From IMG/VR virus record IMGVR_UViG_3300035183_000733, positions 1 to 64,000 of that record: 64,000 nucleotides of DNA. The stretch is one strand, 5' to 3'. Under the pieces are notes generated by a model that saw only the letters and a list, made by a program, of their open reading frames with translations, was not told where the DNA came from and searched no databases. Below, piece by piece: positions 19,877-48,085 of the stretch (position 1 is its first letter; each line of letters starts with the position of its first letter). A program made the translations under genes and the position numbers.

Positions 19877-19951
19877 GTCTCGATAGTATAGCGGCAATTA
19901 TACAACGGTCTCTAAAACCGATAGACATGGGTTCGAATCCCATTCGAGGCA
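19877..19951 (+). tRNA. amber suppressor tRNA(CUA)
   Basis: GTCTCGA/TCGAGGC acceptor; CGGT-CT-CTA-AA-ACCG. Confidence 0.9.
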
Positions 19952-20017
19952 CTTTTTTATAGTTTGGTGTCACAGGGAAAAAGAAGCAGAATTAAGAAAT
20001 AAATTAAAACAAAAGCC

Positions 20018-24105: not shown

Positions 24106-24241
24106 GGGGAAGTAGCCAAACGGTAAAGGCACAAGTCTGTTAAAACTTGCAACACGTACAAAACCATAACGTTACTCTACTTTCTATTGAAAGAACTAAA
24201 TGTTATTTCAGTATCTGGAGGTTCGAATCCTTCCTTCCCCA
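24106..24241 (+). ncRNA. Tyr-like tRNA scaffold with TTCAGTA module in the variable arm
   Basis: GGGGAAG/CTTCCCC acceptor, T arm, 8-nt anticodon loop CTGTTAAA, ~60-nt insert. Confidence 0.75.
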
Positions 24242-24368
24242 CTTTGTTAGTTCATTGATATTTTGAAATTTGATTGGTCGTAAGACGGACAGACAAACAC
24301 ACGCCGCTACGAAAGTAGAATGAATCCTCGGAAGCGTACCGGGCTGTCCCAAGACAGATCAGATAAAT

Positions 24369-24507
24369 GGGGGAGTAGCTAAGTAAGTTACACACCTAAC
24401 GCTACTCTACTCTGGCAACAGAGAACTATGGCGATAGTTCAGTACAAGGTAAAGCAATTGTTTTGGATAACAATCAACCGCTGGTTCAACTCCAGCCTCC
24501 CCCACCA
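24369..24507 (+). ncRNA. tRNA scaffold (Gln-like) with TTCAGTA module in the D loop, encoded CCA
   Basis: GGGGGAG/CTCCCCC-ACCA; insert between AGCTAAGT and GGTAAAGC; distorted anticodon loop. Confidence 0.75.
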
Positions 24508-30298: not shown

Positions 30299-30475
30299 AT
30301 GGCAAAAACAGCTAAAAAGTCGACAGCAAAAAAAGCTAAGGCTACTAAAAAAGCAAAGCCTGCGGCTAAGAAAGCTGCGGTAAAGAAAACTGCTAAACCT
30401 GCGAAGAAGAGCACGCCGAAGGCGAAGGCTACTCCGAAGGCTGAGCCAGCGAAGAAGGAAACTTCACCTCGCTAA
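30299..30475 (+). CDS. 58-aa histone H1-like Lys/Ala/Pro-rich protein
   Basis: MAKTAKKSTAKKAKATKKAKPAAKKAAVKKTAKPAKK...; below ORF-track cutoff. Confidence 0.75.
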   Translation: MAKTAKKSTAKKAKATKKAKPAAKKAAVKKTAKPAKKSTPKAKATPKAEPAKKETSPR

Positions 30476-30650
30476 GCTCAAAAAGGTTGTGTGACGTCGC
30501 TGAGGGAACCCAGTGGACACAGAGGATTATCGTTCCATTCCAGATTGACCATCCTCAAGCAACACTCTCCTGAAAACTGGCGTACGCCCGGAGCAATCCG
30601 GGCCGCGGCCAAGCTGAGTCTCTTAGCCCCCTAAGGCTCAGCGGAACATT

Positions 30651-30777
30651 TGTCGAGTACAACTGGAGGTCAAGCGCTGATCAAAGGTGGTCCTGACGGG
30701 AAGCAGCAGTCTAATTAACTGCTGGAGCCCGATCAAACTCAGCAAAGGAAGTGCGGGTTCGAATCCCGCCTCGACGG
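30651..30777 (+). ncRNA. enlarged tRNA-like RNA (127 nt)
   Basis: TGTCGAG/CTCGACG acceptor, GCGGG-TTCGAAT-CCCGC T arm, multi-hairpin interior. Confidence 0.6.
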
Positions 30778-30958
30778 CAGTGCAAGAACTACGGTGAACA
30801 TGGGTTCGTCCCTCCGCCGTAGTTTTTAAAAATGAATTAAAAACCGAAACAATTCGGGATATATAGAGTATAAAGATAAGATTGTTCTACCTTATTCCCA
30901 ACAAATGGCAGATATACAAACAGGGACTTGCCAGGTAAAATAGTCGAACTAAAAAGAC

Positions 30959-31045
30959 ATGAAGAAGTATAACGCATATCAGCAGTATAATCAAAATCAG
31001 AATCAAAGTTCTGGGCTGAGCGTTATTTCCCCATTTGAAAAGTAG
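30959..31045 (+). CDS. attenuator leader peptide (Tyr/Asn/Gln-rich, 28 aa)
   Basis: MKKYNAYQQYNQNQNQSSGLSVISPFEK*. Confidence 0.85.
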   Translation: MKKYNAYQQYNQNQNQSSGLSVISPFEK

Positions 31046-31065
31046 TAACACACTATACAACGCGT

Positions 31066-31097
31066 AAAAGGCCCAGGACAAAATCCTGGGTCTTTTT
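31066..31097 (+). terminator. attenuator terminator of the Asn/Tyr/Gln tRNA operon
   Basis: GGCCCAGGA-CAAAA-TCCTGGGTC-TTTTT. Confidence 0.85.
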
Positions 31098-31101
31098 ACT
31101 T

Positions 31102-31190
31102 GGGTGGATTACCGTAGAGGCCGAACGGTCCAGACTGTTAATCTGGTGTGACGACGAGTCCCATCGCAGGTTCGAATCCTGCTCCGCCCG
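31102..31190 (+). tRNA. tRNA-Asn(GTT), long variable arm
   Basis: CCAGA-CT-GTT-AA-TCTGG, G73. Confidence 0.9.
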
Positions 31191-31226
31191 CAAAAATAGG
31201 TCCGACACGGGTAGATAGTAAATTAT

Positions 31227-31300
31227 GGACATGTAGCTCAGCAGGTCAGAGCAGCTCACTGTTAATGAGAAGGCCGGGGGTTCGAATCCCTCCTTGTCCG
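31227..31300 (+). tRNA. tRNA-Asn(GTT)
   Basis: cloverleaf. Confidence 0.95.
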
Positions 31301-31305
31301 CAAAT

Positions 31306-31380
31306 TTCTTGGGTGAGTCGGCTGTTTATTACGCGCGCAGCTGACGGTTGGAAGAAGAGGTTCGAGTCCTCCCTAAGGAG
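31306..31380 (+). ncRNA. D-armless tRNA-like element
   Basis: TTCTTGG/CTAAGGA, GAGG-TTCGAGT-CCTC, single GTCGGCTG/CAGCTGAC arm. Confidence 0.4.
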
Positions 31381-31390
31381 CAACAAATAT

Positions 31391-47629: not shown

Positions 47630-48016
47630 TTTTTCCGTTTTATAAATTTGCATCATGCAAGAACGGATTGCCGAGATACGAGAACTGCTCTGGATATAGG
47701 TGCAGACTCGGTCGGCGCCTCGTCCGCGGCCGGCAGTTGCCATATACCGGTGACCGGGAATATTCGGACAGAATTGGTACCGTACCAGGAGTTTCTATTC
47801 AGGAGCTGCGCGGGTGGACGCCGAGCGTGCAAGCGCCGAACTGTCGTGGCCGATGGAAACATTGAATATCTCGGGACATATTTTTCAAGGCGTGGATAAC
47901 CAACTGGCTCCGTGACTTCGACAATTTCCTCCGTAGGAAGAGAATGTGCGAAATAACGTCTATCTTCGAGAAACGATTGTGGACGCGAACAGCGTGGAGA
48001 ACGCGCAAGATATAAG

Positions 48017-48085
48017 GGCCCGTAGCTCAGTTGGTTAGGTTCAACGAGGACTGGAACGCGTTTAAGCCTCGAGTCATCCGGCCCC
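48017..48085 (+). pseudogene. degenerate tRNA
   Basis: GGGCCCG-TAGCTCAGTTGGTTAG start; no valid anticodon or T arm. Confidence 0.4.

What the first reader, a model, noticed from the sequence alone, without database searches (positions are those of the whole stretch)
30480..30825. Large structured RNA region ending in a 127-nt expanded tRNA-like molecule
SEEN: after the H1-like gene, about 170 nt of hairpins (GAGGAT/ATCCTC; CCCGG-AGCAAT-CCGGG; GCTGAG...CTCAGC), then an acceptor + T-arm RNA. Its interior has nested helices and the AGGTCAAG and ATCAAAC words also found in the 47.5/48.1 kb RNAs. It ends in a terminator. INFERENCE: a related, more elaborate member of the same tRNA-mimic family, or a larger ncRNA.
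Basis: partly seen in the sequence, partly recalled or inferred. Interest (0 to 1): 0.62.

Follow-up and report, generated by a model that had tools for sequence, protein, structure and literature searches.

The report
Expanded tRNA-like RNA, truncated phage ncRNA
Behind a small histone-H1-like gene, this 374-kb phage carries a real, conserved non-coding RNA that ends in a 127-nt tRNA with an extra hairpin in its D-loop and a tripled anticodon arm; the copy here has recently lost the front half of a 650-950-nt modular RNA kept by sister phages, and no known RNA family matches it.

Summary
Window 30492-30827 (+) is a structured, non-coding stretch. It has three hairpins, then a 127-nt tRNA-shaped module (30651-30777), then an intrinsic terminator (30788-30827).

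Two syntenic sister phages carry the same module, 88-91% identical and without indels, while flanking genes are 62-85% identical. Of the 13 variable columns that lie in stems, 12 keep their pair, and four pairs changed on both sides.

The module is a full cloverleaf:
- a 7-bp acceptor, U8, and a canonical T-arm;
- a 3-bp D-stem with an invariant GG, plus a 15-nt hairpin inserted in the D-loop;
- a 59-nt "anticodon" arm ending in an invariant CUAAUUA loop;
- G73 followed by CA, as in most of this phage's own tRNA genes.

It is too long to decode. ARAGORN and Rfam (tRNA, tmRNA, GOLLD, ROOL and the rest) do not call it.

In sister phages and in near-identical strains the RNA starts about 335 nt earlier, so the window copy is a recent 5' deletion. 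One strain lacks the whole cassette.

Kinship with the 47.5/48.1-kb RNAs is not supported beyond general tRNA shape, and the shared words are not conserved.

Function is inferred, not shown. I take it to be a non-decoding tRNA mimic, co-transcribed with the H1-like gene and cut out by tRNA-processing enzymes.

The parts
30299..30475 (+). Lys/Ala-rich H1-like gene (58 aa); the RNA follows its TAA stop and probably shares its transcript
   Evidence: ORF list. No Pfam hit. Syntenic small K/A-rich genes in L091, L092, L094, L111 and L112. No promoter-like site was found between it and the RNA on the + strand.
30484..30491 (+). Deletion junction: sister phages and near-identical strains carry about 335 nt more here (the 5' domain of the RNA)
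   Evidence: Blastn of the L091 RNA matches the window only from 30492, and the 5' part is absent from the whole 373,759-bp genome. A soil contig (X3) places 30483 and 30492 at its own positions 532 and 868. X3 and X4 have the letters GACGTTAGGCA before 30492, as in L091.
30492..30650 (+). 3'-domain part A: three conserved hairpins (30522-30556; 30586-30603 with a GCAA tetraloop; 30613-30642 with a C-rich loop) joined by invariant single strands such as CTCTCCTGAAAACTGGCGT
   Evidence: Folding. Alignment and RNAalifold with L091 and L092 show compensatory changes in each hairpin, for example GAGGAT/ATCCTC versus GAGGACA/TGTCCTC and GCCCGGA/TCCGGGC versus GCTCGGA/TCCGAGC.
30651..30777 (+). 127-nt expanded tRNA-like module: acceptor 30651-57/30770-76; U8 A9; D-stem 30662-64/30686-88 with invariant GGA 30665-67; inserted hairpin 30668-72/30678-82 (loop AGCGC); long anticodon-like arm 30691-94/30746-49, 30697-700/30728-31, 30704-10/30718-24 (loop CUAAUUA 30711-17); T-arm 30753-57/30765-69; discriminator G30777, then CA
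   Evidence: Structure and pair counts. 88-91% identity and no indels against L091 and L092. Model R1 aligns ordinary tRNAs end to end. The N73-CA 3' context is the norm for this phage's tRNA genes. G-U pairs fix the strand as +.
30788..30827 (+). Intrinsic terminator; its inner part GGTGAACATGGGTTCGTCCCTCCGCC is conserved in L091 and L092
   Evidence: 13-pair stem in the MFE and centroid folds, followed by TTTTT. Conserved element seen. The simple scan missed it because the loop is longer than 8 nt.
30897..30946 (+). Cassette boundary: a roughly 45-nt motif (CCCAACAAATGGCAGATATAC...TTGCCA, hairpin GGCAG/CUUGCC) that stands both before and after the RNA in L091 and L092
   Evidence: Motif scan. 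A wastewater contig (X5) joins 30483 to 30903 and so lacks the whole RNA.

Best explanation
This is a genuine, selected non-coding RNA of a huge phage.

Shown:
- The last 127 nt fold as a tRNA cloverleaf whose core is intact: 7-bp acceptor, U8, D-stem with GG, canonical T-loop, and G73.
- Two parts are expanded. A hairpin is inserted in the D-loop, and the anticodon arm is 59 nt long, with 15 bp and two internal loops.
- The module is the 3' end of a modular RNA that is 650-950 nt long in sister phages. The window's phage has recently deleted its first roughly 335 nt.

Inferred mechanism:
1. The RNA is transcribed from the H1-like gene's promoter and ends at the terminator at 30788-30827.
2. 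RNase P cuts before 30651. The 3' end is trimmed and completed by the phage's own CCA-adding enzyme. This releases a stable tRNA mimic and sets the 3' end of the upstream RNA.
3. The long arm puts the loop far beyond anticodon distance, so the mimic cannot decode.
4. Its invariant loops (AGCGC, CUAAUUA, and the AAG/GAG internal loop) are recognition surfaces for a partner. The partner would be a tRNA-binding protein of phage or host, or another copy of the RNA.

The mimic would therefore act as a decoy or scaffold in the phage's large translation toolkit, not as an adaptor.
For: - Conservation above that of the neighbouring genes, with no indels.
- 99% of cells paired, 4 double-sided compensatory pairs in the module and 8 over the 3' domain.
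- Strain variants keep pairing: 30651 T>C, 30681 T>C, 30707 C>T and 30754 C>T each switch a pair between G-U and Watson-Crick.
- Model R1, built only from this module, aligns ordinary tRNAs over its whole length at 17-28 bits, so the shape is tRNA-like.
- About 32 of 50 tRNA genes of this phage end N73-CA and 7 end N73-CCA. The module ends G-CA and has U at -1.
- The phage encodes a PolyA_pol/CCA-adding family protein.
- RNase P is known to process tRNA-like non-tRNA substrates, including pre-tmRNA and phage M3 and C4 RNAs (PMC11143913).
- All loop sequences are invariant in three phages whose flanking proteins are 47-65% identical.
- A 196-nt contig from a soil metatranscriptome library covers 30488-30673.
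Against: - Only three clear homologues exist, plus one divergent one (L111), so covariation statistics are weak: 39 of 500 shuffles reach 4 double changes.
- No raw RNA reads were available, so transcript ends, processing, CCA addition and stability are all unobserved. The metatranscriptome contig could come from DNA carry-over.
- The window copy lost its 5' half very recently, since strains 95-99% alike still have it. Its sequence conservation therefore does not prove that the truncated RNA still works.
- One strain lacks the whole cassette and sister phage L094 has none, so it is dispensable.
- No binding partner is identified.
Confidence: 0.5

Rival explanations
1. It is a GOLLD/ROOL-type large "ornate" phage RNA. 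The long form (5' domain, 3' domain, covalently linked tRNA-like unit) would assemble into an RNA-only multimer. The tRNA-like unit is a tethered passenger or an assembly module, and the window holds a crippled remnant.
For: - The long form has 650-950 nt of structured non-coding RNA next to a tRNA island in a phage.
- It has a better conserved 3' part and a variable, dispensable 5' part.
- GOLLD is described as having just that layout, often near tRNA islands and sometimes with tRNAs in its linker. GOLLD and ROOL form cages (bioRxiv 10.1101/2024.12.08.627333; PMC5737381).
- Two invariant loops of the module hold self-complementary words, AGCGCU and UAAUUA.
Against: - No match to the GOLLD or ROOL models at E up to 10 in the window, in the long forms, or in the whole genome at this place.
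- Palindromic loops may be chance. UAAUUA is all A-U, and AGCGC is only a 5-nt loop.
Confidence: 0.2
2. It is only a 3'-end processing and stabilising element for the H1-like mRNA, like the mascRNA of MALAT1 or plant mitochondrial t-elements. The released tRNA-like piece would have no function of its own.
For: - It lies directly behind a probably highly expressed small gene with no promoter between them.
- tRNA-like elements are used this way elsewhere (PMC1920247 and PMC6152437, listed).
- Sister phages without the RNA have a plain U run (L094) or a plain hairpin (L112) at the same place.
Against: A processing signal needs only the acceptor and T-arm. Here the loops and internal loops of the two expansions are invariant, and about 160-500 nt of further conserved structure lie between the stop codon and the module.
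Confidence: 0.15
3. The window copy is a decaying remnant, a non-functional leftover after the 335-nt deletion.
For: - The deletion is recent and flanked by microhomology.
- A further roughly 100-nt hairpin domain behind the terminator, present in L091 and L092, is also missing from the window.
- One strain lacks the whole cassette.
Against: - The remaining part has no disrupting change: every helix is intact.
- The modules vary independently among phages, including an L091-only insertion of about 190 nt and the different 5' part of L111. That fits separable functional units.
Confidence: 0.1
4. It is a working adaptor: a second tmRNA-like RNA (tRNA-like domain plus a short tag frame with UAA in a hairpin loop) or a decoding tRNA with introns.
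For: - The phage encodes SmpB.
- The loop carries UAA, like helix 5 of tmRNA, and the D region (UA CAACUGGA) resembles the stem-less D-loop of tmRNA (my recollection of E. coli tmRNA).
Against: - A canonical 435-nt tmRNA is present elsewhere in the genome at 131661-132095 (-), 86.7 bits, so SmpB has its partner.
- The module is not even among the weak tmRNA hits.
- Position 3:70 is U-A, not G-U, and the discriminator is G.
- Changes in the putative frame are compensated in the stem and alter the residue (CAG to UCG), so the constraint is on structure.
- No excision gives a 5-bp stem with a 7-nt loop. Position 37 would be U.
- ARAGORN finds nothing here even in intron mode.
Confidence: 0.03

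Closest known systems
tRNA (Rfam RF00005)
   Same: Four-arm cloverleaf, 7-bp acceptor, U8, GG in the D-loop, 5-bp T-stem with a TTCGAAT loop and the G53-C61 pair, a discriminator base, and the same N73-CA gene ending as the phage's real tRNAs.
   Different: 127 nt long. A 15-nt hairpin is inserted in the D-loop. The anticodon arm is 59 nt with 15 bp. Loop position 37 is U. It scores 16.7 bits against a threshold of 29, and ARAGORN is silent.
GOLLD and ROOL large phage RNAs
   Same: Large structured RNA of phages beside tRNA islands. The 3' part is conserved and the 5' part variable. A tRNA can be covalently linked.
   Different: No similarity detectable by the covariance models. Here the tRNA-shaped unit is a non-canonical mimic at or near the 3' end. 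Oligomerisation is untested.
tRNA-like domain of tmRNA
   Same: Acceptor plus T-arm, with a long helix leaving from the anticodon-stem position. Expected to be processed by RNase P.
   Different: It has a D-stem, no G3-U70, no pseudoknots and no credible tag frame. The phage's true tmRNA is elsewhere.
Phage stable tRNA-like RNAs and RNase P substrates (T-even "tRNA-like molecules", phage M3 RNA, P1/P7 C4 RNA)
   Same: Phage-encoded small RNAs with tRNA-like ends that depend on tRNA-processing enzymes and lie in or near tRNA clusters (PMC11143913; details of the T4 species 1/2 RNAs are from my memory).
   Different: No sequence relation was tested or known. Here the module is the tail of a much larger structured RNA.
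mascRNA/MALAT1 and plant t-elements
   Same: A tRNA-like unit at the 3' end of a longer transcript that is cut off by RNase P.
   Different: Those are eukaryotic or organellar. Here the expansions carry invariant loops, which suggests a role for the unit itself.
Bacterial Y RNA (YrlA) with Ro/Rsr
   Same: A non-coding RNA with a tRNA-mimicking domain. Some jumbo phages carry Ro/TROVE (PMC7824862).
   Different: No TROVE gene in this genome. In YrlA the RNA ends form the Ro-binding stem, not an acceptor stem. No Rfam hit.

Membership tests
tRNA | 7-bp acceptor stacked on a 5-bp T-stem with a 7-nt T-loop (T54 Psi55 C56 ... A58) | tested here: met
   30651-57/30770-76 and 30753-69 (GCGGG TTCGAAT CCCGC). 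All pairs are kept in 3 phages.
tRNA | 5-bp anticodon stem with a 7-nt loop, U33 and a purine at 37, at fixed distance from the acceptor end | tested here: not met
   The arm is 59 nt (4+4+7 bp with two internal loops). The loop is CUAAUUA, with U at position 37.
tRNA | Recognised by tRNA detectors (Rfam gathering score, ARAGORN) | tested here: not met
   RF00005 gives 16.7 bits on a partial alignment against a 29-bit threshold. ARAGORN finds nothing, with or without intron mode.
tRNA | Aminoacylation and decoding | not testable with these tools
   Needs biochemistry.
tmRNA | G3-U70 alanine identity, A73, a tag reading frame, pseudoknots, and a match to the tmRNA models | tested here: not met
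   3:70 is U-A and the discriminator is G. No hit at E up to 10. A canonical tmRNA lies elsewhere at 131661-132095.
GOLLD (RF02032) | Match to the conserved 3' domain model | tested here: not met
   Nothing at this locus in the window, L091 or L092. The whole genome gives only a 10-bit hit elsewhere.
ROOL (RF03087) | Match to the ROOL model | tested here: inconclusive
   No hit. The tool warns that the control search rang nowhere, so that call alone proves little. The cmscan calls are the better test.
   AGGTCAAG becomes ATGCCAAG or AGGCCAAG, and ATCAAAC becomes GGCAAAAC in L091. The positions differ.
   29.3 and 25.0 bits, against 24-28 bits for tRNA-Tyr, Gln and Val. Only the acceptor, UAC..GG and the T-arm align.
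Y RNA / YrlA | Partner Ro (TROVE) gene in the genome | tested here: not met
   No PF05731 match in the 373,759-bp genome.

The most novel reading that the evidence does not exclude
The RNA would be the first seen member of a new class of large modular phage RNAs built around an expanded tRNA scaffold. The two expansions point from the elbow and from the anticodon end, and each ends in an invariant self-complementary loop (AGCGCU, UAAUUA). The L-shaped units could therefore link loop to loop into a defined multimer, a natural counterpart of GOLLD/ROOL cages or of designed tRNA polyhedra. Alternatively, the mimic is a dedicated decoy that soaks up a host tRNA-cleaving defence enzyme or a tRNA-binding factor.
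Probability: 0.15. Interest if true: 0.8.

Novelty: new variant of a known kind. Interest (0 to 1): 0.58.

Why it matters
Huge phages carry dozens of tRNAs, synthetases, tmRNA and SmpB, but their non-coding RNAs are hardly charted. This one is a conserved RNA with an intact tRNA core and two deliberate-looking expansions. It hangs on a large modular RNA next to a tRNA island, and no Rfam model sees it.

If it is processed and stable, it adds a new type of tRNA mimic to phage biology. Nature has also supplied the comparison set: long, short and empty alleles among near-identical strains. If the long form turns out to be a multimer like GOLLD or ROOL, it would link those enigmatic RNAs to tRNA biology more directly than anything known so far.

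Tried and rejected
**Searches for more homologues.** All of these failed or returned chance hits.
- blastn against phage GenBank records found nothing.
- Protein-seeded scans of IMG/VR with the 610-aa and GlxRS neighbours found nothing.
- Exact-pattern scans of IMG/VR found either nothing or coding-region chance hits.
- Exact-pattern scans of JGI metagenomes found nothing or one chance hit inside an ATPase gene.
- Contigs found through the ARPP-1 neighbour either ended too early (L114) or had lost synteny (L115-L118).
- The Logan records behind L091, L092 and L094 could not be searched for homologues of the 47.5/48.1-kb RNAs. The conservation of those RNAs therefore remains untested.

**Hypotheses tested and dropped.**
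- tmRNA. I raised it when SmpB turned up and dropped it when the canonical tmRNA was found.
- GOLLD and ROOL.
- Y RNA, because there is no TROVE gene.
- Hammerhead. A CUGAUGAG word lies in the L091-only insertion, but cmscan gives no ribozyme hit.
- Protein coding under any stop reassignment.
- A tRNA with introns (and inspection).

**Uncertain relative.** L111 shares the place, a 5' motif (GACAGGA ... GAGATCTGTTAGT), a GCAA hairpin and a T-loop. Its 3' end folds more readily into a 10-bp stem than into a tRNA shape. I treat it as a doubtful relative and left it out of the pair counts.

**Reads.** Read laying was given 901 letters.

Full report
**Setting**

The window is the first 64 kb of a 373,759-bp IMG/VR virus record rated complete. 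It is a huge phage from a microbial-mat metagenome.
- ARAGORN calls about 50 tRNA genes, two of them with a CUA anticodon.
- It has a canonical tmRNA, SmpB and a CCA-adding-family enzyme.
- A Glu/Gln-tRNA synthetase lies just downstream of the finding.

The finding lies between a 58-aa Lys/Ala-rich "H1-like" gene (30299-30475) and an array of tRNA-Asn, Tyr and Gln genes.

**Observation**

- Hairpins at 30522-30556, 30586-30603 (GCAA tetraloop) and 30613-30642.
- An acceptor and T-arm unit of exactly 127 nt (30651-30777).
- A terminator (30788-30827).

The 355-nt stretch folds 4.1 sd better than shuffles. No reading frame is open, and no single stop reassignment opens one. Rfam gives nothing but a sub-threshold partial tRNA match of 16.7 bits. 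ARAGORN gives nothing, even with introns allowed.

**Relatives**

Direct DNA and protein-seeded scans of phage GenBank records and IMG/VR found nothing.

The 610-aa upstream protein has a handful of relatives in Logan assemblies. Their contigs are syntenic: ARPP-1 gene, 610-aa gene, H1-like gene, then the tRNA-Asn/Tyr/Gln array and GlxRS.
- L091 (protein 65% identical) and L092/L093 (47%) carry the RNA.
- L094 (34%) has none.
- L112 has an unrelated hairpin.
- L111 has a divergent RNA of about 430 nt.

**The window copy is truncated**

In L091 and L092 the non-coding RNA begins right after the H1-like stop and runs about 630-700 nt to the tRNA-like end. The window aligns only from 30492, which corresponds to position 340 of the L091 RNA. 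The missing roughly 335 nt are nowhere else in the genome.

Contigs from a soil run and a freshwater run are 95-99% like the window over the parts they cover, and they carry the extra segment. In the soil contig, 30483 and 30492 lie 336 positions apart. Both contigs show the L091-like letters before 30492. The deletion is therefore recent. It is also real, because the source runs hold all sampled words of the stretch.

A wastewater contig joins 30483 directly to 30903, so that strain lacks the whole cassette. The joint lies in a roughly 45-nt motif that stands both before and after the RNA in L091 and L092.

Other modules vary too. L091 has about 190 nt more between the tRNA-like unit and the terminator. 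L091 and L092 both have a further hairpin domain of about 100 nt behind the terminator. The locus is thus a mosaic of structured RNA modules that are gained and lost. Rfam matches none of them.

**Structure of the module**

I combined RNAalifold on the three sequences with my own check. The result is a cloverleaf:
- Acceptor 30651-57/30770-76. The first pair is U-G here and C-G in all relatives and in the strain variants.
- U8 and A9.
- A 3-bp D-stem (30662-64/30686-88). Its loop starts with an invariant GGA and holds an inserted 5-bp hairpin (30668-72/30678-82, loop AGCGC).
- An anticodon-like arm of 59 nt: 4 bp, an internal loop, 4 bp, an AAG/GAG internal loop, 7 bp, then the loop CUAAUUA.
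- A 3-nt variable region.
- A canonical T-arm.
- G73, then CA.

On this structure 104 of 105 cells are standard pairs, against 25-56% when partners are slid. Four pairs changed on both sides. Of the 13 variable columns that lie in stems, 12 keep their pair. The four strain variants inside stems do the same. G-U pairs on this strand fix the orientation as +.

The unit is 88-91% identical to its homologues without a single indel. The flanking genes are 62-85% identical at the DNA level.

With three sequences the shuffling control is not decisive: 39 of 500 shuffles reach the observed number of double changes. I rest the case on the sum of the evidence, not on one statistic.

**It is tRNA-shaped but not a tRNA**

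A covariance model built only from the module (R1) aligns ordinary tRNA genes end to end at 17-28 bits. That is an independent sign that the architecture is that of a tRNA.

The gene ending fits as well. About 32 of 50 tRNA genes of this phage end N73-CA and 7 end N73-CCA, and most have A/U with U or A at -1. The module ends G-CA and has U at -1.

On the other side, the anticodon arm is three times the normal length and position 37 would be U. Decoding on a ribosome is therefore not credible.

**Rejected identities**

- **tmRNA.** Finding SmpB made me test the tmRNA idea, because the loop carries UAA and the D region is tmRNA-like. The phage has a normal 435-nt tmRNA at 131661-132095 on the minus strand (86.7 bits). 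The module lacks G3-U70. Changes in the would-be tag frame are compensated in the stem and alter the residue.
- **GOLLD and ROOL.** They do not match the window, the long forms, or the genome at this place. The biology is similar, though: large phage RNAs beside tRNA islands, a conserved 3' and a variable 5' part, and sometimes a tRNA in the linker.
- **Y RNA.** There is no TROVE/Ro gene.

**Relation to the 47.5/48.1-kb RNAs**

The two words are present in all three RNAs. AGCTCAAG-type evidence is weak, however:
- AGGTCAAG occurs 6 times in the window against 1.8 expected, and 25 times in the genome.
- In the homologues of the module the word is not kept, because it lies in the covarying inserted hairpin.
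- In the other two RNAs it sits in a hairpin upstream of the acceptor.
- ATCAAAC is likewise at non-equivalent places.
- R1 scores those RNAs like ordinary tRNAs and aligns only the tRNA core.

I conclude that they share tRNA shape, possibly including a common U8-A9-C...GG D region, but no specific family tie is shown. I could not fetch the homologous regions of the sister phages to test those RNAs themselves.

**How it most likely works**

Shown: a conserved, structured, non-coding, + strand element with an intact tRNA core, expanded arms and invariant loops. It has a modular long form in relatives and natural long, short and empty alleles.

Inferred:
1. It is co-transcribed with the H1-like gene. 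No promoter-like site lies between them, and a conserved terminator follows.
2. RNase P cuts at 30650/30651. RNase P is known to accept such tRNA-like substrates (PMC11143913).
3. The 3' end is trimmed and CCA is completed by the phage enzyme.
4. The released RNA acts as a non-decoding mimic. Its invariant loops bind a partner.

Both expansion loops contain self-complementary words, AGCGCU and UAAUUA. That keeps open an RNA-RNA assembly like that of GOLLD or ROOL. I rate this as possible but unproven.

A pure 3'-end processing role for the mRNA does not explain the invariant loops. Decay of the truncated copy cannot be excluded, because the deletion is recent.

**Novelty**

tRNA-like RNAs and large phage RNAs beside tRNA islands are both known kinds. 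This one matches no described family and combines the two in a new way, so I file it as a new variant of a known kind. The number of known representatives is small (three clear, one doubtful) and the function is untested.

Noticed in passing
window 30863-31097 (ORF 30959-31045; terminator 31070-31097): This looks like a leader-peptide attenuator for the tRNA array. A phage promoter-like box (TATATAGAGTATAAAGATAAG) and a conserved hairpin precede a 28-codon ORF, MKKYNAYQQYNQNQNQSSGLSVISPFEK, rich in Asn, Gln and Tyr. A strong terminator follows, and then come the tRNA-Asn, Tyr and Gln genes and GlxRS. The end of the ORF (GUUCUGGGCU, 31008-17) pairs with the 5' half of the terminator (31070-79): -23.4 kcal/mol, z -3.3, against -20.8 kcal/mol for the terminator. 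L094 and L111 have N/Q/Y-rich leaders too, and L111 shows a compensatory change (ACCGGGC/GCCCGGU). cmscan gave a weak Phe_leader hit on L092. If real, the phage senses shortage of charged Asn, Gln or Tyr tRNA and then switches on its own tRNAs.
   Followed up: partly
G000 131661-132095 (-), 195025-195441 (+), 303121-303492 (+) (outside the window): The phage encodes a canonical tmRNA (86.7 bits) that ARAGORN missed. It also encodes SmpB (E 1.8e-49) and a PolyA_pol/CCA-adding family protein.
   Followed up: partly
window 24106-24242, 24369-24507, 31310-31385; G000 about 274.40-274.49 kb and 295.44-295.59 kb: There are more non-canonical tRNA-shaped RNAs. One is a tRNA-Asn(GUU) with a variable arm of about 62 nt. 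Another is a 139-nt acceptor and T-arm RNA with encoded CCA. Several more units have an acceptor and T-arm with odd interiors.
   Followed up: partly
whole genome, e.g. window 31102-31191 versus 31227-31301 and 47316-47401 versus 47415-47489: Many isoacceptors come in pairs: one tRNA of normal length and one 80-91-nt version with a long variable arm. This holds for Asn, Gln, His, Val, Lys, Gly, Glu, Thr and Met, amino acids whose tRNAs normally have short variable arms.
   Followed up: no
all tRNA genes of G000: About 32 of 50 tRNA genes end N73-CA, not N73-CCA or an arbitrary trailer, and 7 encode the full CCA. This suggests a particular 3'-maturation route, perhaps tied to the phage's own CCA-adding enzyme.
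   Followed up: no
window 19877-19952 and 42187-42258: Two tRNAs with a CUA anticodon (amber suppressors, labelled Pyl by ARAGORN) hint at TAG recoding in part of the genome. The leader ORF above ends TAG followed directly by TAA.
   Followed up: no
L092 8290-8420; L091 8190-8260; L111 2068-2125: The 5' domain missing from the window contains a repeated module (GGACAGGA ... hairpin ... GAGATCYGTTAGTYG). It is present once in L091 and L111 and twice in tandem in L092.
   Followed up: no
window 48016-48080: A canonical-looking tRNA 5' half (GGGCCCGTAGCTCAGTTGGTTAG) is followed by sequence that does not complete a normal tRNA. It lies just upstream of the 48.1-kb tRNA-like RNA.
   Followed up: no
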